Shown here one piece after another: positions 49,355 to 61,040 of a stretch of DNA of 64,000 nucleotides. The stretch covers positions 1,170,916 to 1,234,915 of the forward strand of contig CAJFCJ010000020.1 of NCBI GenBank assembly GCA_904063045.1, written 5' to 3'. How positions within the stretch are numbered: position 1 is the stretch's first letter; each line of letters begins with the position of its first letter. The stretch is from Dimorphilus gyrociliatus (Eukaryota; Animalia; Annelida). The notes under the pieces were generated by a model. That model was given only the letters and a program-made list of their open reading frames with translations. It was not told the DNA's origin and made no database searches. The position numbers were made by a program, and so were the translations under genes.

Positions 49355-52300
49355 TCAACGTCTAAGCCCTTCATCGTAACGTCTGCTCCTTATTTTGCGA
49401 TCGTCTGCATATTTCCTTTCTTCGGATCTTTTCCTGCGATAATTTCTTCTATCCTGATCTGAATCATTGTCACTATCGTTTCTTTTTCTATTTTCTTTAT
49501 CATGTTTATCATTTCGTCGACTATAACTATCTTTCCTCGGTTTATCCTCATCAGATGAGTATTTTCTAGCTTTCTCTTGATAATTACTCCTTCTATCAGA
49601 ACTTTCACCTTTTCTATCTCTGTCATCGTCGGAATCATATCTCCGCCTCTCTCGTCTTTCAAGTCTACGACTTTCCGACTTTTTACTTTCTGGTTCTTTG
49701 TCTTCACTATCATCACTATCATACCTTCTATTTTTTCTTGTATCTTTCTGCTCGTATCTTCGACTCTCTCGTCTTTCTTCTTCACGATCACTATCATCTC
49801 TTCTTCGTCCGTTGTCTTTATACTGCCGATCACGTCTTCTATCAGTTTGCCCACTTCTATTTTCTCTTCGAGCTTCTTCACTATCACGTCGCTTATTGTC
49901 TCTATTGCTGATGTCATATCCTCTGCGATCTGTTCGGTCATTTCTATCATATTTTCCATCTTCATCTGTATCACTATCTCTTCGCTTGCTTTCTTTACTG
50001 CAGTGCTCATTTCGTTTTCGGTCTGTTCGTTCATTTCTTTGATTTCTTCTATCTTCATCTGTATCACTATCTCTTCGCTTGTTTTCTTTACTATAATGCT
50101 CATATCGTTTTCGATCTGTTCGTTCATTTCTCTGATTTCTTCTATCTTCATCTGTATCGCTATCTCTTCGCCTGTTGTCTCTGCTGTAATGTTCGTGGTG
50201 TTTGCGATCTGTCCTTTCACTTCTATCAAATGTTCGATCATCGTTGGAATCGCTATCATATCTCTTTCTCTCAACATCTTTATCACGACGATCACTTCTT
50301 TGATTATTAGTCCTACTTTCTCGTCGGTTATTATCTTCTCGGTCAGATTGGTCGGAGTCGACATGTCTTCTTCGCTGTTTGTCTTTTTCCACGTACTTTC
50401 GTTTTTCTGACTTGGTATTTCTTCGATCATTTTCATCATCACTTTCGTTTCTCTTTTTGAAAGATTGTCTATCGAGCTCGTATCTCTTATCCCTTCTAGT
50501 ATTCTTTCGTTCTTCATCGACTTGTTTCTTAGTAGACCCTTTGCTCTCTTTATCATATTTGCCGCCATCGTACTTATCTCTCCCATTATCATCAGAATCA
50601 CTGTCATAATCATCTTTTCGCCTGTCGTATTTTTTAAGTTCAACCCGTCCTCTTCGAAGTTCGTTTTTCGGTTCGTCTGATTCATCCTCACTTTCAAATT
50701 TTAATTTGCTGTGATCTTTGTCTACTAATTGACCTTGATCCGAGTAATTTCTTCTATGACGTTCCCCTCCTTCATCACTGTCTCGCCTACGCCTGTCAGT
50801 ATCTCGACTAGGTTTTCTCTGTCGTTTATCATGTGAATATCTCCTTTTGTCAACTTGCTCATCTTCACTGTCGCTGTACTGTTTAGTAGCCATTGCCCTT
50901 CTCTGACGGTAGGCAGATTTCTCAGGTCGATCTTCTTTCTGACGCGATTTGATGTTTTCCTTCCGGAGCGAGCTTTTACGATTCTTCTTAGTTTTACGTT
51001 TTGCGCCAGATGACGATGATGACGATGATGACGATGATGACGATGATGATGATGACGACGATGACGACGACGATGATGATGATGATGATGATGATGAGTC
51101 AGATGATGAAGAATCCGAGTCTGAAGATATAGGTGTTAAAACTCGAGGTTGCATTTTGGGCATTTTTTTCAAAAACTCTCTTAATTCGTCAGTAAGGCCT
51201 CCTAAACCAATAGATGTAAAAAAATTGATTGCGAATCGTGTATTTCTTGGATTATCTTTTGGGAAGATTCCCTCAAAACTGTTTGACAGAGTTTCGTCGT
51301 GGAGTCTGGTTAATAGCTTAGGCAAGCCCATATGCTCAGCAAGGTCTTGAAAAAGTATTTTAATGAAGATTCTGCTTGAAGATGTTGTATCATCTTCATT
51401 TAGCCTTATAATTGAGAAAATTTCGAAAGATATCGCATCACTAAAAAACAAATGAGAAAAAAAACGGCCAACATTCCTCAACTTTGTTATTTCCAATCTG
51501 TGAATGGTTCCGTATTGCTCTTTAAACAATTCTTGAAAATGACCCACATACTCTTGTTTCAACATACAAAAACGCTGCCCCAACAAACCAAAAAACTTTT
51601 CATATGTTCGTTGCTGAGCGCAGCAATCAAGTATCATGCCGGCAACTTCTTTTTCCTGACCTGGTTTTAACTCCATTTTTAATAACTTATGTGCGCATTC
51701 TTCAAAGTCAAGAGAACTTTGAATTGTTAGGTAAATGGTTTTTCGTAATTCCACCAAGTTAGTTTCAGTTTGATCCAAAATTTGTGCTTCTTCTTTTTCT
51801 TCTTCTGATTTCTCAGATCCAGATCCAGATCCAGATTCATCTCCCGATCCGGAATCAGATGAAGACTCATCCAAAATTTCGCGACTGAGTGCCTTATATT
51901 TTTCTTCATTTATCGTATACTCAGAATCAAATTTAAAAACATTCAACATCTCTTCTCCTTCTATATTACTTTCTAGAGTCATCATGTGTGTGAACTGATC
52001 TTCTTCTTGAACTTGATCAAGATCTTCTTGTATAGCAGGATGGTCTTTGAAACCATCCTTACGAGTGGCAAACATTACCTCAATCATATATTGAATTCTT
52101 TGCTCAACTTGACCTTCATGTAAAACGTACCGAAGACGTTCAAATACTGCATGAGTTCCACGAGGAGACACTTCGGTGAGTTTTGCACCGCATTCACGTA
52201 AAAATCCCACTGCTACTTCAACGCTATCATTTGTTGGAGTTTCAAGAAGTAGAGTTAATACTTCTAAGGCCAGGATTTCGTGCGCCACCTGCTGATTTAC

Positions 52301-52970
52301 AAGATGAGCAATAAAATTCAATCCTGAAAGGCACATGGTTTTATTATTCCTTCGAAAACCTTTTCTAAATTGAATCAAGAGACGCTTCAGCAGTAGCTCT
52401 CCTATCTGAGGAAATTTTGTATTAACAACTGAAACTAATGCAGCATAGACATTTGTAAAAGTTGGAGAAGCAGTTTGTGCTTGGATTATTGATTTTACAA
52501 AAAGACCTCTTCCTCTAATTATATTTTCTTGAAACAATTCTCTGACAATTTGGCCAAGATTTGATGTGTTTACTTTGTTAATTAATCCATTAATTGATTT
52601 CTTAAGAGCCTCCCATGCTAGCCTTTGATAAGACTCTGATTCTTTATCGGTTATTTTTTCCTGCATCATTCTCAACTTAGCAGGTGGAATGTAGGCTCCT
52701 CCGGTTTTGGTATAAATAGAATCAGACTTTCCTTTTTCATTTTGCCTGCTTGTGTCTTTCTCGGCAGATGCGCCATCAACGTTCGCATTATCGCTCGGCT
52801 TTTTAACTCGATCAAACTTAGGTCTTTTAGCATCAGGCTCATCCTCACTTTGAGGTCTCTCCTGCTTTTCACTACAATAAAACATAATAATCGTGAAAAA
52901 AAATTATAAAATATATGAGTACTATTGATTGTTCAGTTATAAACGTTATAAATTCGTACCTGTCAGACAT
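49355..52970 (-). CDS. CWC22: Pre-mRNA splicing factor CWC22 (MIF4G + MA3) with long RD/RE/RS tail; exons 52970-52960, 52871-49355
   Basis: [69 protein letters not shown]. Confidence 0.97.
49870..50255 (-). repeat. Coding minisatellite, 93-bp (31-aa) unit x4 in the CWC22 tail
   Basis: TTCATCTGTATC recurs at 49961, 50054, 50147 (period 93), degenerate copy at 50240; unit [31 protein letters not shown]. Confidence 0.85.
51009..51095 (-). repeat. (TCA/TCG)n poly-Ser tract, about 29 codons, in CWC22
   Basis: GAT/GAC triplet run on the plus strand. Confidence 0.9.
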
Positions 52971-53551: not shown

Positions 53552-56500
53552 ATGAGTGAGATGAAGGTAATTCTTCTTATATTTACTAAAACTATAATAA
53601 TACAGCTTACAAATAACTACAATTTGCGAAAATTTGCCTATTTATAACTAGTTCTTTTTATTCGAGTCGACGGCGTCGTTAGATACAGAAATTTTTTACA
53701 AGTTATATTTATTTTCATTTACTTTTGTAGAAAGTATTCTCAGTGCCTAATAGTATTCATGGCCAATCTTCGATCTACTTCTGCTGGCAAAAGAAACTTG
53801 GAAACTACCTGGCAACAACTAGGTAAAACAAATTCATTTGATATTGAATAGTTAGTAAAAATTCCTTTCTAGTTTCGACAACATTGTCAGAATCTATGAT
53901 CGACATGGAGATCTACTTCAAGACCCTAGTTTGCCCGGTATGTGTTCTGGATTGGGATGGGACAAGGATGGCGACAATCTTGCAATGATATCTGACAAGA
54001 GTGGAATTATATTTTTATGGAGTACAAATTCATCCAAAATCCAACAAATCGACAGTGGTTTTAGGTAAAATTGTATTCTTAATGAGTGAATTTTTCATCA
54101 AATGTTTTCTACAACAGAGACACATTGACCGTGCTTTCGTGGGCTAAAAATAGTCATCTACTCGGTATAGGAACGCAAAAAGGGAATCTCCTTATTTATA
54201 ATCCAACAACTTCTAAGTAAGCACACACTCTCTAACTTGATAACTCTGAAATTGTACGTTTTTAAAGGAAAATTCCAATCCTTGGCAAGCACACGAGAAG
54301 TATTACGTGCGGTTGCTGGTCCAGAGAAAACCTACTTGCCCTTGGATCAGACGACAAAACAATAACAGTATCAAATACTGAGGGAGATACTATCCATCAA
54401 ACATCATTACGCGCATCTCCAACGGATATTCAATTCTCCGAAATGAAGTTAAATGAGAGAAGCGCCACGGGTGATAACACGGTAATGAAAACTTTTGTTG
54501 TTTTTGTTCGTTTTGTTAATTTAACAAAATACTTTTCTAGATTAGCTGCATTGTTGGAAAAAAGTCCTTGTTGCTACTAAATATGGATGATCCAGAAAAT
54601 CCTGTTGAATTGGCTTTTCAAGGCCGTTACGGACAGATTGTAGAATATAAATGGTATGGTGATGGGTATATCTTAATAGGTTTTTCAAACGGCTTCATAA
54701 TATCAATATCAACCCACTCGTCAGAAATTGGTCAAGAGTTATTCCAAGTAAGCTTTATTAGTGCATTAATACAATTGAAAAAATGTTTCGTTCAATTGTA
54801 GGCTAGAAATCATAAAGATCAGTTAACCTGCTTAACAGTATCCTATGTTACCCTGAAAGCAGCATCTGGTGGGGATAACGTTGTCAAAGTTTATGAGATG
54901 ACTGATATGAAAGAAATCAGTGCAATTATAAACTTGGAGGAAAGGCCTGATTCAATCAATTGGACAGATGATGGGCAATTACTAGCTGTTTCAACGGTTA
55001 AAGGAAATTTAAATGTTTATTTGTCTAAATTACCCCAACTAGGAGCAGCTTATCAAACAAGACTAGCATATTTAACCTCTCTCCTGGAGGTTACAGTTCA
55101 AGATGATGTGAATCAAGATGGTTCTCAGCTATTAAATGTTGATATAGAGCCATCTTTTCTAGGCATAGGACCATTTCACGTTGCTGTGGGAATGAATAAT
55201 AGAGCTTGGTTCTATATAATGGCAGATTCAGGTACGTTTTCCCTATTGTTTGTAATAAAAATAGAAAATTTCTGGCGGCATCCACTTCTTTCAATTGGTT
55301 TATTATTTAAAAACAAAAGATGGTAGATTATCATGAATATTGCCGAAAAGTATTGGCATAAGTTGACATTTTACAATGTTTTTGATCTTTGTAATACTTT
55401 CACTGTGTTCCTAAATCATATTTTTCGCATCTTTAATATTTATTGATAGTCTTATTTGTCATAATATTATTGGAACTCGTCAGAAACTTTATTCAAACAA
55501 CAAACACGCAATAATATAATATTTATTTATAATATCTAAGCCATTTTTCTTTAAATTCACGAATCTTCCACTATAAACAGTCTTAAGATTCGGTAAATTA
55601 TGTTCACTTTAAGTGTTTTATCTGTTACTTTGTCACAAAATCTGTACAGGAGAAGCTATGAATGTTCCATCACAGTATTACAGTGAATCGAGTACGTCGT
55701 ATTCCTTTTTAGCATGGCTTAAATGATTATTTTTTTCTTCTTTTGAAGATTGATCTTTATGAAAAATTTGATTTCTGTAAAGCTTATCCTATTCATTGCT
55801 TGTCGTAATTTATAATTATATATATGTAGATATATATATATATATATATATTTATTCTGTATATAATTCTAGATATCTCTTTTTATATTATTCTATGTGT
55901 TATCTAGGTCCAGAGAAAGTGAGAGATCGCGAATATTTGGGAACCGTTCAAGTTTGTAAATTAAACGCAGACTATTGTGCAGTAAGATTTGAAAACAGAG
56001 TCCAACTGCATGTAATTGAAGAAGAAGGAAATAATCCCGAAAGAGAGAGTCGCCTATTCCCAGAGAATGAATCAGACTGCAAAGTTACTTGCCACGATCT
56101 GACACCCGAATTTTTAATTTTTGCAACTAATGTAAGTTTTCAAGAAGATTTATCAAACTTGCTAAACAATTTTCTTTATAATTAGACTGGAGGTATTTTC
56201 TATTTTTATCTGGAAGATTGGCAATATGTCAACGAATTTAAGCACATCACTGGCATAACCTATTTAACATCTGACCCTTACGGCACTCGATTAGTTTTCA
56301 TTGACGATAAAGCCGATGCTTTTGTTTATAATCCTGTAAACGACGAACAGGTTGCCGTGCCTCAGTTCTCTGCCAAGACTACTGGCATTCTTTGGGATCA
56401 GTGGCAATTAGACAAGGGAGTTTTTGTATCCTGGGACGAAGAGTTCATCTATACGTATCTCTATAGTCGAGATTCAATCAAAGGCCCTGATTGTAAACTG

Positions 56501-59500
56501 ATCGGAACTACCAAGTTGCCTTTTGGACATATTCCACTGTTATTAGTTAATGGTGACATTTATTTGCACACAACAAGTGGCAAGGTAATCACGAGTACGC
56601 TAGATACTCACGTTTCGGAAGATGAAGGTGAGTTATTTATGAATTTTAAAGAAAGTTTTTTAATAGAGAATAAATTAAACTATCAATAGTCCAAACGGAA
56701 GAACAGAAAATAGAAGCTATGAGAAAATGTATCCAATTAGGCAGATATAAATCAGCCATTACCTATGCAACATCATTAGATAAGAAAGAATTTTGGAAAG
56801 AAATTGGAGATCACTGTTTGACTTATTTAGATGTTGAAACTGCAACAAGAGCTTTTAGGCAAATGGGAGACGTCGGTATGGTCCTCTCACTAGAGGATAT
56901 AAAAGGAATTGACGATAAGAATCTCCTCTCCGGTTACATATCAATGTATTTAAATGAGTTTGATATGGCCCAAGAGTTATTCATCAATTCAGAGAAGCCA
57001 TCTGCTGCTTTAGAAATGAGACGAGATTTAATGCACTGGGATGCTGCTTTGCAGTTAGCAAAAGCTCTAGCTCCTGATCAGATCCCTTATATATCGAAAG
57101 AGTACGCACAGCAATTAGAGTTCACAGGAGATTACATGAACGCCCTCTCCCATTATGAAAAAGGAATAATTAAAGATAGTTCTTTAAGAGAACATAATGA
57201 GCAATGCGCTGCTGGTATTGCAAGAATGTCCATAAGAATGGGCGACATAAGAAGGGGAGTAGGTATGGCGGCTAAAATGCCGAGTCGGGTTTTGAAAAAA
57301 GATTGTGCTGCTATATTAGAAAGTATGAAGCAATGGAGCGAAGCAGCAGTTTTGTACGAAAAGGGTGGATTTTTTGATAAAGCCGCTTCTGTTTACATAA
57401 GATCGAAAAATTGGACCAAAGTAGGTGAATTATTACCGAATGTCACTTCCCCTAAAATACATGGCCAATACGCAAGAGCTAAGGAGGCAGAGGGTATACA
57501 TAAATACCATTAATTATTTTTCCTCATTTCCATAGTTTGTTATTCAATAGGACGTTACAAAGAGGCGGTTCAGGCTTATACGACAGCCAAAGAATGGGAT
57601 GACGTTATTAGATTACAATTGGACCATTTACATAACCCGGAAGAAGCCGTCAGAATTGTACGCCATAGTCAATCAACAGATGGAGCAAAAATGGTTGCTA
57701 ATTTCTTCCAGAAGTTAAACGACTACGGATCGGCTATCCAATTTTTGGTTATATCCAGACATAACGATGAAGCATTCCAACTTGCTCAAGCTCATGACAA
57801 AATGGAAGTTTATGCAGATATCATAGGTGAAGATGCAACTCCTCAAGACTACCAGTCTATTGCCTTATTTTTTGAGAATAGAAAGAATCACTTCCTGGCA
57901 GGGAAATTCTTTCTCTATGCTGGACAGTACCAGAGGGTATGATTATTTTAATTTTAAGTTCTATTTTTATATTTTAAAGATCATTTGTCTATGTCGTTTT
58001 ATATATTGTTTTCTACGGCTCCTTTCCTTTAGATACACTATAAATCTTCATTAAATGTTAATTTAGGCTTTGAAGCATCTTTTGTCGTGTAACGAAACTA
58101 AAGACGGTGCACCAATAAATCTAGCTATCGACGTAATAGGAAGAGCTCAAGATGAACAACTAACAAGACAATTAATCGACTTCTTAATGGGAGATTTAGA
58201 CGGCGAGCCGAAGGTTTTAAAAAAGCTACAACATTCGCCTATTTTCTTTCAGAGATTTAACAATTTTTCACTTCAAATTTGATGTTTTTTTTGTTTCACG
58301 TTTGTTTGCTTTTTCTGCTAATCCTAATCAAAAAACTGTCATCATGCTTTTTCTCTCAAATTAATTAGGCTTTATCTCATCTCTTCAAATGTGAAACGGT
58401 TGAAGACGCTAATTTGGTTCCTCTAATAATAGAAACAGCTTCTAAGAGTCAAGATGATATAATAATTCACAATGTGATTGAATATTTAATGGGAGAGTTG
58501 ACTGGACTTCCAAAGGTTGACTTTAAATAATGATAATTTTATAAGCAGAAGTATATTATTATTAAAAGAAAAGTCATTAAATTACGTTACTCCTGTCGCT
58601 TAAGAATATGAAATTATAAAGATTAAAACAAAGAGAAAATAATTATATAATATATGTTTAAGCATTCTATTAATTCATAGTTAGAATAGTTATTTGATAA
58701 ACTATACTAGATTTCTCTCTCACTGCTAAAAAAAAACTAAGAAGAGCGCTTGAACTAATTCTTTTAAAACTGCTTAAAATTTTTAACCTAGAAATATTCT
58801 TTCTTTGTTTCCATAAAAATTTACCTAATTTTTTATCCACAGGATGCAAAATATTTATTCAGATTGTATATGGCCTTGAATCAATTTGAAGAGGCAGCCA
58901 GAACTGCTATAATAATCGCTAGAGAAGAACAAATTGGCGGTAAAATTTTAATGAATTTAATAAGTTATTTATTTTTTTGTTTTAATCGCTTTCTAATATT
59001 GTATAGGTAATTATAAAAACGCTCACGATGTCCTATTTAGTATGTATCAAGAATTAAAGAAAAACAAAATCAAAATACCCGCAGAGATGGCCAATAATCT
59101 CATGATATTACATAGTTACATTCTTGTCAGGGTAAACGATTATATCTTGGTCGTTAGTAAAATAAACGAATAATGAATAAATTATTCAAATTAGATTCAC
59201 GTGAAAAAGGGAGACCATTTGAAAGGAGCTCGCCTACTTATTCGTGTGGCCAATAATATAAGCAAATTTCCTTCTCACGTTGTGCCTATCTTAACATCTA
59301 CTGTAATAGAGTGTCAAAGAAGCGGGCTAAAGAATTCAGCTTTTAGCTATGCCGCTATGCTTTACAGACCCGAATATCGAGATAAGATTGATGTAAAATA
59401 TAAGAAGAAGATTGAAGGGATTGTTAGAAAATCTGATAAGACAGAAGAAGACGAAACTACTTCATCGTGTCCATTTTGCGAATTTCAATTGCCAGACATG

Positions 59501-59880
59501 GAGTTGATGTGTCCAGAATGTAAGAATACAATTCCCTATTGTATAATTTCAGGTAAAATCCTTTAATACCTTTCAATTTAAATTGATGGTAAATTCAATG
59601 AATAATAAATTTATAGGAAAACACTTGATTAAATCGGATTTATGCGCCTGTCCTGTATGTGATTTTCCTGCAATAGAAACCGAGTTTAGGAGGTAAGTAG
59701 TTTAATAACATCTAAAATTTCCATCATCGAGTCTATCAATTTTAAACTGTAAACTTTTCAATTTCTAGTATCCTAGAGATGGAAGATCGTTGTCCAATGT
59801 GCTCGGAGCCGGTTCTTGCTGAGAACTTGCGAAAAGTTACGGAGCACGATAAATATTTGAATAGAAACCTAGACTCTTAA
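53552..59880 (+). CDS. WDR19: WD repeat protein 19 / IFT144 (IFT-A core), many short introns
   Basis: [17 protein letters not shown]...[84 protein letters not shown]-terminal CPFC/CPEC zinc knuckles. Confidence 0.97.
55650..55691 (+). other. Candidate 42-nt symmetric (phase 1-1) cassette exon inside the WDR19 intron
   Basis: TGTACAG|GAGAAGCTATG...GAATCGA|GTACGT; no stop; encodes (G)[13 protein letters not shown](S). Confidence 0.55.
58067..58515 (+). other. Tandem duplicated 147-nt WDR19 exons (58067-58213 and 58369-58515), candidate mutually exclusive pair
   Basis: Both TAG|GCT...AAG|GT, phase 0, 49 aa, 18/49 identical. Confidence 0.8.
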
Positions 59881-61040
59881 AACAAAAATAGAACAATATT
59901 CGTTCATTCATATCGTTTTTAATCGTTTCCGTCCGATTAAAATAAAATTATGTAATCAATGTCACAGTAAATGGTATATTAATAAAATTATATTACAACA
60001 TAAGGTTACAATATCTATTGGACTAATGGAAATGGTCAATCAGTGAGCTAATGCTTCAATATCTTTCATTTTATTTATCTTAAATCTGAAATTGATTAGG
60101 CCTTTGATCCTTTAGTATACGTTACCGTTCTGCTTGGGGTAGTTTGGAGTAAATATTTTGTAAATCAAACTCCGTCGCTTTGACTTACCTTCTTAACTTA
60201 TTTGTTTAGTTACTGAATGTTTAACTCATTAAGATCTCTTTTTACATTTCTTTTAATTAAATTGGCAGTTGACAATAATAATACGTCTTATACAATGTGA
60301 AATTGGGCTCATGGTTCATGAGAGAACATTTGAAAAGGGAAAGGTCGGTTTTTTGTTAACTAATTGCTCTTTATTCATCCGTCATGTAATTTTTTTTGAG
60401 GGGATGTGGGCGTAGAGGAGGGAAGTGGATAAATCCTAACTATACCTGAGGAGCAACCACTTGGTTAAAGATTTGAGCAGGCTGCTGCTCATTACCGCTC
60501 CACTGCAGGGATGTAGGATAACAGTAGAGATGGTCAGATTACTATGGCATAGCAGAAATCGCAATCCTCAGAAAGCATAATGATAAAGATCAATTTGGAT
60601 AATTTAAAGTCAATAAGTTTACGTCTAAGGGTGTAAAACGACACTAAATATACGAGGTTAGCTTAAATTAGGTATATTTCTAAGAGTAAACAAGTGCTGG
60701 GTGTACATTTTCAGATTGATGAGACAAAGCTCGATAGAATTTTAAATAGGTTGGAATTCTGCGCTCCCCAATAGATGTCAGTACTATCTCGGGATCATTT
60801 TTTATTTCAAGAAGAGTTTATCGGCTAGTATGTAGCTTAAGGATAAAAAAATTCGTAAATTTATTTTATCATATCATTATTATCTATAAGACAAATAGAA
60901 ATTTTTTATTGGCCACTATTGACCAGTATTGTGAACAATAACTGATAAAATAGTTGATCCCCCAACATGGCTGTCTCGGATACAGCTTGTCCGCATCACA
61001 ACGGTTTTATCGGCTACAGAGCACGGATCTAACCATAGAG

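What the first reader, a model, noticed from the sequence alone, without database searches (positions are those of the whole stretch)
58067..58515. Duplicated, diverged exon pair in WDR19/IFT144 (candidate mutually exclusive splicing of an IFT-A core subunit)
Seen: two 147-nt phase-0 exons encode [49 protein letters not shown] and [49 protein letters not shown] (18/49 identical, many conservative changes, no stops, intact splice sites). Both precede [12 protein letters not shown]. Known: this segment is single in human WDR19 (from memory) and lies in the C-terminal helical/TPR region. Inference: deep divergence with an intact frame implies selection, possibly cilium-type-specific (motile, sensory, sperm) IFT-A isoforms. 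Since 147 is divisible by 3 and the spacer is 155 nt, co-inclusion is not excluded.
Basis: partly seen in the sequence, partly recalled or inferred. Interest (0 to 1): 0.74.

Follow-up and report, generated by a model that had tools for sequence, protein, structure and literature searches.

The report
Swappable exon pair in IFT144 gene
A tiny marine worm's gene for IFT144, a core part of the machinery that builds cilia, holds two diverged copies of one exon; RNA shows each copy spliced in on its own, so two protein versions are made, and the same exon is doubled in several other invertebrates, which no paper I could find describes.

Summary
Exons A (58067-58213) and B (58369-58515) are each 147 nt, phase 0, with AG/GT sites. 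They are 18/49 identical, and both align without gaps to human WDR19 residues 1039-1087.

RNA-derived contigs identical to the window show all four either/or junctions: upstream>A, upstream>B, A>downstream and B>downstream. Their depths are comparable. No A>B junction and no double-skip junction was listed. So mutually exclusive use is supported at contig level.

A contig also runs unspliced from A through the 155-nt spacer into B, in this species and in a ~91%-identical relative. The spacer has an in-frame stop.

Synonymous sites between A and B are saturated (dS about 1.8). The relative keeps both exons free of indels, while the spacer has four.

The same exon is tandemly doubled, with intact splice sites, in at least six other unnamed animal contigs. 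Whether the window's pair comes from the same old duplication is unresolved.

From a structure predicted on a related protein, the exon encodes one helical hairpin plus a conserved loop. In human numbering it ends 16 residues before the deltaC truncation point and lies N-terminal to the IFT88-binding cleft.

What each isoform does, and which cilia use it, is untested. This is a new member of a known kind.

The parts
57551..57936 (+). Constitutive upstream exon of WDR19/IFT144. It ends on a full codon (..CAG AGG|gtatga) and donates to either A or B.
   Evidence: Joints 57493>57551, 57936>58067 and 57936>58369 in RNA contigs; sequence.
57937..58066 (+). Intron from the upstream exon to A, 130 nt. 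No unspliced contig was seen over it.
   Evidence: the depth in bin 57984-58090 is fully accounted for by exon A's 25 nt (my arithmetic).
58067..58213 (+). Exon A, 147 nt / 49 aa, phase 0. This is the canonical-like version. Its donor GTTTTA is weak.
   Evidence: 41.9 bits to human WDR19 1039-1087; joined to both flanking exons; 59% identical to the first copy of L032.
58214..58368 (+). Spacer intron between A and B, 155 nt. It has an in-frame TGA at 58280-58282. It is found unspliced in RNA contigs of two species. No A>B splice was seen.
   Evidence: record 15 in X6, 58185-58397; record 9 in X3, upstream-exon tail + A + intron + start of B; read-through translation.
58369..58515 (+). Exon B, 147 nt / 49 aa, phase 0. 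This is the diverged version. It differs from A at positions that are nearly invariant elsewhere: A20I, L32I, D45T. Its donor GTTGAC is weak.
   Evidence: 27 bits to human WDR19 1039-1087; joined to both flanking exons; conserved columns.
58516..58842 (+). Intron from B to the downstream exon, 327 nt. A low-depth unspliced contig covers it. In the relative it aligns only over its last ~95 nt.
   Evidence: record 17 in X6; record 11 and loose ends in X3.
58843..58939 (+). Constitutive downstream exon (starts [12 protein letters not shown]). It accepts from either A or B.
   Evidence: Joints 58213>58843, 58515>58843 and 58939>59007.
53750..59880 (+). Approximate span of the whole WDR19/IFT144 gene in the window: beta-propellers, TPR-like solenoid, C-terminal zinc fingers. 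The ends were not mapped precisely.
   Evidence: spliced RNA contigs of 3.2 kb and 0.8 kb.

Best explanation
A and B are tandem duplicates of one WDR19/IFT144 exon, and they are spliced in an either/or fashion. The worm therefore makes two IFT144 isoforms of equal length that differ only in 49 residues. By the fold predicted for a related protein, these residues form the end of one helix, one complete helical hairpin of the C-terminal TPR-like solenoid, and the conserved loop G-x-x-D/T-G-x-P-K. In human numbering this is 1039-1087. It ends 16 residues before the deltaC truncation point (1103) and lies N-terminal to the IFT88-binding cleft (Y1157-E1200). It also lies within the TPR arm that the neighbouring complex's IFT140 wraps in assembled trains.

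Shown here: both exons are real, expressed, joined to the same two flanking exons, and under long-term coding constraint.

Inferred: the middle intron is not removed. Transcripts in which both exons were chosen keep it and run into a stop codon. That would enforce exclusivity even though 147 is divisible by 3. My probability for this step is about 0.4.

Inferred and untested: the two hairpins tune a contact of IFT-A (lateral polymerisation or IFT-B tethering) in different cilia, stages or sexes.
For: run X6 (10 of 10 contigs at least 99% identical to the window; constitutive introns have zero depth, so the run is RNA-derived). Junction depths are: upstream>A 274, upstream>B 188, A>downstream 144, B>downstream 167. 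All have GT..AG ends. No A>B joint and no double-skip joint is listed. The short sides of the junction contigs (24-27 nt) are what I would expect if the contigs come from a 31-letter-word graph (the k is my assumption from the run index's 31-letter words) that branches at an alternative exon, because A and B share their first 5 and last 3 nucleotides.

One search, run X3 (a relative about 91% identical). It has a contig of upstream-exon tail + A + spacer + start of B, a B>downstream joint (depth 86), no indels in either exon, and four indels in the 155-nt spacer.

dS about 1.8 (saturated) and dN about 0.66 between A and B, with both frames open in 34-41% GC sequence.

both exons align without gaps to human WDR19 1039-1087.

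the same exon is tandemly doubled with intact AG/GT sites and phase 0 in L003, L004/L006, L009, L012, L030 and L032/L033.

in a model of a related C-terminal fragment (pLDDT 87), the exon covers H183-195 (part), H199-212, H215-226 and loop 227-235.

Structural context comes from 10.1101/2022.08.09.503213, PMC10191852 and PMC10066299.
Against: All RNA evidence is from assembled contigs, which drop rare variants and give one depth per contig. Only one run is of the same species. The junction contigs have fewer than 31 nt on one side, below the tool's own bridging rule. In X3 the A>downstream and upstream>B joints were not listed. Minor co-inclusion or double skipping therefore cannot be excluded. 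No known exclusivity mechanism was demonstrated. There is no information on tissue, stage or sex. The exon's partners within IFT-A were not computed, only read from papers on the human and Chlamydomonas complexes. B departs from residues that are nearly invariant elsewhere, which could also mean partly relaxed constraint.
Confidence: 0.85

Rival explanations
1. The exclusion is leaky. A and B behave as two independently regulated cassette exons. Besides A-only and B-only mRNAs, there are real A+B mRNAs (a 49-residue in-frame repeat gain) or mRNAs with neither exon, at levels too low for contigs to show.
For: 147 is divisible by 3, so neither co-inclusion nor double skipping would break the frame. 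The 155-nt spacer is long enough to be spliced in a gene whose other introns are 57-76 nt. Contigs drop rare variants (caveat stated).
Against: No A>B joint and no 57936>58843 joint is listed, although four other joints at this site are. What is seen between A and B is the unspliced spacer.
Confidence: 0.1
2. Exon B is a decaying relic that is spliced in only as noise or as a non-productive form. Only the A isoform is functional.
For: B is the less canonical copy (27 against 41.9 bits to human). It changes residues that are nearly invariant in other animals. It sits on a long branch in the trees.
Against: The contig depths of the B junctions equal or exceed those of A in two runs. B's frame is open although synonymous sites are saturated. 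The relative has no indels in B, against four in the adjacent spacer. Second copies are also kept in many other animals.
Confidence: 0.04
3. Both exons are constitutive, and the gene has simply gained a repeat unit.
For: Both exons are in frame and have intact splice sites.
Against: Direct upstream>B and A>downstream joints exist, and no A>B joint is seen. The depths of A and B add up to roughly the depth of the flanking exons rather than each equalling it (a rough measure only).
Confidence: 0.01

Closest known systems
Human WDR19/IFT144 (PDB 8FGW chain C, 8BBF chain A), residues 1039-1087
   Same: This is the orthologous gene (E 1.8e-104 on one exon). Each of the two exons aligns without gaps to the same 49 residues. 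The exon borders are kept in many animals: single-exon ORF fragments read Q|AL.H...PK|V.
   Different: The human protein has one copy of this segment. Here there are two alternative copies. I did not examine any human genomic sequence.
Mutually exclusive exon pairs made by tandem exon duplication, for example ATE1 exons 7a/7b (PMC7797038), sodium-channel exons 5a/5b (PMC12772994), and surveys of human tandem-duplicated exon substitutions (PMC9741552, PMC5740500)
   Same: The exons are adjacent, homologous, of the same length and phase, and each is joined to the same flanking exons. The duplication is old, and both versions are expressed at comparable levels.
   Different: No competing RNA structure was found here. 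The host gene is an IFT-A core subunit, and I found no description of such a pair in that gene.
Tandem pairs of the same WDR19 exon in unnamed animal contigs L003, L004/L006, L009, L012, L030, L032/L033
   Same: The same exon is doubled, with the same borders and phase, intact AG/GT sites and spacers of 238-989 nt. The first copy resembles A (up to 59% identical).
   Different: In those contigs the first and second copies differ at fully diagnostic columns, for example position 2 is L in first copies and V/M in second copies. B does not follow these columns consistently. The organisms are unidentified, and no RNA was examined for them.
Either/or exon pairs in the IP3-receptor gene of the same genome (earlier notes s1-080423 and s1-081886)
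   Same: Same genome, same kind of event, on the same contig about 33 kb beyond the window.
   Different: A different gene. I did not re-test those notes.

Membership tests
WDR19 / IFT144 orthologue | Two N-terminal WDR19-type beta-propellers | tested here: met
   Pfam Beta-prop_WDR19_2nd E 8e-21 and Beta-prop_WDR19_1st E 1.7e-5 on one exon.
WDR19 / IFT144 orthologue | TPR-like solenoid whose best match is IFT144 rather than IFT121, IFT122 or IFT140 | tested here: met
   Human WDR19 E 1.8e-104 and Chlamydomonas IFT144 E 8e-62, against IFT121/122/140 at E 1e-11 or weaker.
WDR19 / IFT144 orthologue | C-terminal IFT144 zinc finger | tested here: met
   Pfam Zf_IFT144_1st E 1.1e-13 over the full profile length.
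Mutually exclusive exon pair from tandem exon duplication | Adjacent exons that are homologous and share length and phase | tested here: met
   147 nt each, phase 0, 37% amino-acid identity, E 3e-13.
Mutually exclusive exon pair from tandem exon duplication | Each exon is spliced to both common flanking exons | tested here: met
   Four joints in X6 contigs. The sides are 24-27 nt, as I would expect from branching in a graph of 31-letter words (assumed k).
Mutually exclusive exon pair from tandem exon duplication | The two exons are not spliced to each other, and are not both skipped | tested here: inconclusive
   No such joint is listed in the contigs of four runs, but contigs cannot show the absence of rare forms. 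Raw reads are needed.
Mutually exclusive exon pair from tandem exon duplication | Both copies kept by selection | tested here: met
   dS is saturated with open frames. In a ~91%-identical relative both exons are indel-free while the spacer has four indels. dN/dS between species could not be computed.
Known exclusivity mechanism: steric hindrance | The spacer is too short for a spliceosome (about 60 nt or less from donor to branch point) | tested here: not met
   The spacer is 155 nt. Constitutive introns of this gene are 57-76 nt.
Known exclusivity mechanism: U2/U12 incompatibility | One of the introns has a U12-type donor (G/ATATCCTT) | tested here: not met
   The donors are GTATGA, GTTTTA and GTTGAC. 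The U12 consensus is from my own knowledge.
Known exclusivity mechanism: frame-shift plus NMD | Exon length not divisible by 3 | tested here: not met
   147 = 3 x 49. However, the retained spacer carries an in-frame TGA at 58280-58282.
Known exclusivity mechanism: competing RNA structures (docking and selector sites) | Intron-intron complementarity beyond chance, conserved with covariation | tested here: inconclusive
   The best duplexes between the three introns are no better than dinucleotide shuffles (z from -0.8 to +1.0). The spacer fold has z 0.46. No relative's intron sequence was available to test covariation.

The most novel reading that the evidence does not exclude
The either/or exon in IFT144 is an ancient feature shared by many invertebrate phyla and absent from the vertebrate protein. 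It would define two flavours of IFT-A train that differ in one TPR hairpin next to the IFT88 cleft and the IFT140 interface, with each flavour serving a different class of cilium (for example motile bands or sperm versus sensory cilia). On this reading, exclusivity is enforced by a spacer intron that cannot be spliced and so acts as a built-in poison sequence.
Probability: 0.25. Interest if true: 0.72.

Novelty: new member of a known kind. Interest (0 to 1): 0.55.

Why it matters
In the structural papers read here, the IFT-A core is described as one fixed six-protein complex. How one machine serves very different cilia is, to my knowledge, an open question. Here there is a conserved, roughly equally used pair of alternative hairpins in IFT144, and two structural facts frame it. 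In human numbering the pair ends 16 residues before the deltaC truncation point, a truncation that breaks IFT-A/IFT-B contact. It also lies inside the arm that joins neighbouring IFT-A complexes. Together this gives a concrete, testable handle on isoform-specific trains. The worm is small, has several cilium types and strong sexual dimorphism, and other invertebrates seem to carry the same device. The finding also offers a possible example of exclusivity enforced by a retained, stop-bearing spacer when the exon length is divisible by three.

Tried and rejected
1. Docking/selector RNA pairing. RNAduplex between the three introns scored no better than dinucleotide shuffles. The inverted repeats are A/T-rich and unremarkable. 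The spacer fold has z 0.46.

2. A hidden small RNA in the long introns. Rfam found nothing at E up to 1.

3. The idea that a weak GTY donor marks the second copy. Single-copy contigs have GTY donors too, so it is not diagnostic.

4. Word search with exon B. It found no short fragments.

5. Profile search of 1.84 billion representatives with A+B. No protein with two stretches turned up, so no gene model with both exons is among the best 150. The hits were mostly single-exon ORF fragments. The two-stretch hit P0087 is a split fragment, and P0053 is an unrelated repeat protein.

6. Trees of the 49 columns. They cannot say whether the window's pair shares its origin with the other pairs. A+B as sisters is not rejected (p 0.16-0.19). 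All second copies including B as one clade fits equally well (p 0.48). Columns that are diagnostic elsewhere are mixed in B.

7. First attempt at the metagenome scan. It failed because the exon alignment was too variable. The downstream-exon profile worked.

8. One hit, P0119, looks mammalian. I did not fetch or pursue it.

9. Tissue, sex or raw-read junction counts could not be obtained, and the relative's exon sequences could not be extracted for dN/dS.

Full report
OBSERVATION.
- Both stretches are 147 nt. Both are preceded by ttag and followed by gt, and both open with GCT and close with AAG.
- BLASTP of the two 49-residue peptides gives 18 identities, 29 positives, no gaps and E 3e-13. 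At the nucleotide level they are 51% identical.
- The upstream exon ends at 57936 on a complete codon. The downstream exon begins at 58843 with [12 protein letters not shown].

THE GENE.
- A 259-residue exon at 56719-57495 matches human WDR19 at E 1.8e-104. It matches Chlamydomonas, Tetrahymena and trypanosomatid IFT144 at E 1e-50 to 1e-62, and other IFT-A subunits far more weakly.
- Pfam finds both WDR19 beta-propellers and the first IFT144 zinc finger.
- Each alternative exon aligns without gaps to the same human residues, 1039-1087, as a single stretch. A scores 41.9 bits and B 27 bits. So the human protein has one copy, and A is the more canonical version.
- The whole genome (77.9 Mb, 349 contigs) holds only these two copies. 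No other exon of the gene is duplicated.
- Notes by other agents name the genome as Dimorphilus gyrociliatus. I did not verify the name.

RNA EVIDENCE. I could run one search for sequencing runs and one laying of reads.

Run X6:
- All ten contigs laid are at least 99% identical to the window. Constitutive introns have zero depth, so the material is RNA.
- It contains contigs for all four either/or junctions: 57936>58067 (depth 274), 57936>58369 (188), 58213>58843 (144) and 58515>58843 (167). All have GT..AG ends.
- No A>B junction and no junction skipping both exons is listed.
- The junction contigs have only 24-27 nt on their short side, below the tool's 31-nt rule of thumb. These lengths are what I would expect if the contigs come from a graph of 31-letter words (the k is my assumption, taken from the run index's 31-letter words) that branches at an alternative exon. 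A and B share their first five and last three nucleotides, so the unique paths begin 25 nt before the exon and end 27 nt after it. I therefore read them as real alternative junctions.
- Using contig depths only as a rough guide, entry into the downstream exon is about 44% from A, 51% from B and 6% unspliced.

Run X3:
- This is a relative about 91% identical, and its contigs are also spliced.
- One contig runs from the last 24 nt of the upstream exon through A and the whole spacer into B (depth 41.5). There is also a B>downstream junction (depth 86).
- The other two junctions were not listed, which contigs cannot prove absent.
- In X3 neither exon has an indel, while the 155-nt spacer has four.

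SELECTION AND AGE.
- Between A and B, synonymous sites are saturated (pS 0.68, dS about 1.8) and dN is about 0.66. Both frames are open in AT-rich sequence.
- B changes several positions that are nearly invariant in 22 aligned versions of this exon: A20I, L32I and D45T. So it is either specialised or partly relaxed. Its expression level and its conservation in the relative argue for specialisation.

OTHER ANIMALS.
- A profile of A+B searched against 1.84 billion representative proteins gave 287 hits. Most were single-exon ORF fragments from genomic contigs, reading Q|AL.H...PK|V. This shows that the exon's borders are widely conserved.
- Fetching the contigs behind some hits, and scanning metagenome contigs with the conserved downstream exon, revealed that the same exon is tandemly doubled in six further lineages:

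| Contig(s) |
|---|
| L003 |
| L004 and L006 (a 625-kb contig with the full gene context) |
| L009 |
| L012 |
| L030 |
| L032/L033 |

- All of these have AG/GT sites, phase 0, lengths of 147-153 nt and spacers of 238-989 nt.
- In L012 the next exon is doubled as well.
- Intronless protist-like contigs have one copy, as do a vertebrate-like contig (in which the exon is split by an extra intron) and some short contigs.
- Among the other pairs, first and second copies are separated by fully diagnostic columns, for example L against V/M at position 2. The second copies of four lineages form a clade with 90/85 support. So that duplication predates those lineages.
- For the window, A is clearly first-copy-like (59% identical to the first copy of L032). 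B is mixed: its start is first-like and its last helix is second-like (H34, V36, E38, Y39).
- AU tests do not reject either scenario. A+B as sisters gives p 0.16-0.19. B placed with all second copies gives p 0.48.
- The organisms behind these contigs are unnamed.

WHAT THE EXON ENCODES.
- An AlphaFold2 model of a related 433-residue C-terminal fragment was built with 19 sequences (pLDDT 87).
- It puts exon positions 1-10 at the end of one helix. Positions 14-27 and 30-41 form a helical hairpin. Positions 42-49 lie in a loop that leads into the DAKYLF helix.
- The first helix of the hairpin is where A and B differ most (2 of 14 identical).
- From the literature:
  - In trains, the IFT140 TPR of the neighbouring complex wraps the IFT144 TPR, and the IFT172 C-terminus docks at the IFT144 C-terminus (PMC10191852).
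  - In the free complex, TPR17-18 and the zinc domain touch IFT121 (PMC10066299).
- The alternative hairpin therefore lies in or next to surfaces used for polymerisation and tethering. Which partner it touches was not computed.

HOW EXCLUSIVITY MIGHT WORK.
- The known mechanisms do not fit:
  - The spacer is 155 nt, while the gene's other introns are 57-76 nt, so steric hindrance is unlikely.
  - The donors are not U12-type.
  - The exon length is divisible by three.
  - No intron-intron pairing beats shuffled controls.
- What the RNA does show is the unspliced spacer. In X6 it has depth 57, against 0 for the upstream>A intron and 19 for the B>downstream intron. In X3 the spacer sits inside a contig whose upstream junction is already spliced.
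- My inference, at about 0.4 probability, is that the spacer is not removed when both exons are chosen. Such transcripts hit the in-frame TGA at 58280-58282 and are non-productive.
- Both alternative exons have weak GTT donors, while constitutive donors in this gene begin GTA. This is usual for regulated exons.

COMPARISON AND NOVELTY.
- Either/or exon pairs made by tandem duplication are a well-known kind (PMC9741552, PMC5740500, PMC7797038).
- Full-text searches found no paper that describes one in WDR19/IFT144 or in any IFT gene.
- The scan's own notes held nothing on this gene.
- I file it as a new member of a known kind. Its interest is raised somewhat by the host gene and by its recurrence in other invertebrates.

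LIMITS.
No full-length isoform was searched or folded.
- The RNA evidence is at contig level only.
- Tissue, stage and sex specificity remain untested.

Noticed in passing
window 58214-58368: The spacer between A and B is present unspliced in RNA contigs of two species, at a sizeable depth (57 in X6, 41.5 in X3). Constitutive introns and the upstream>A intron have none. The spacer aligns to the relative over its full length, whereas most of the B>downstream intron does not. This suggests a detained or unspliceable intron.
   Followed up: partly
L012:1342-1437 and L012:2195-2290: In one unnamed metagenome animal, the exon after the pair (starts [12 protein letters not shown]) is also tandemly duplicated, with intact AG/GT sites. 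That would be a second candidate either/or pair in the same gene.
   Followed up: partly
window 57937-58842 against 57494-57550, 58940-59006, 59131-59194, 59551-59615: The introns around the alternative exons are 130, 155 and 327 nt. The gene's constitutive introns are 57-76 nt. So long introns flag regulated exons in this compact genome.
   Followed up: partly
window 49355-52885 (-): A single 1176-codon open frame with MIF4G and MA3 domains. It is followed by a long serine run and R/D/E/S-rich repeats.
   Followed up: partly
L016:513-742 and L010:576-653: In vertebrate-like contigs, the 49-residue exon is split by an extra intron after residue 24 and is present once.
   Followed up: no
window 57057-57937 and 59204-59900 (runs X1, X2): A marine metatranscriptome and a coral metatranscriptome hold spliced fragments of this gene at 95-100% identity. 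So this worm or a near relative lives in those samples.
   Followed up: no
L032 and L033: Two contigs of more than 1 Mb from one sample carry the same WDR19 exon pair with identical peptides but different spacer lengths (989 against 1133 nt). They may be two haplotypes. A reverse-transcriptase ORF lies upstream.
   Followed up: no
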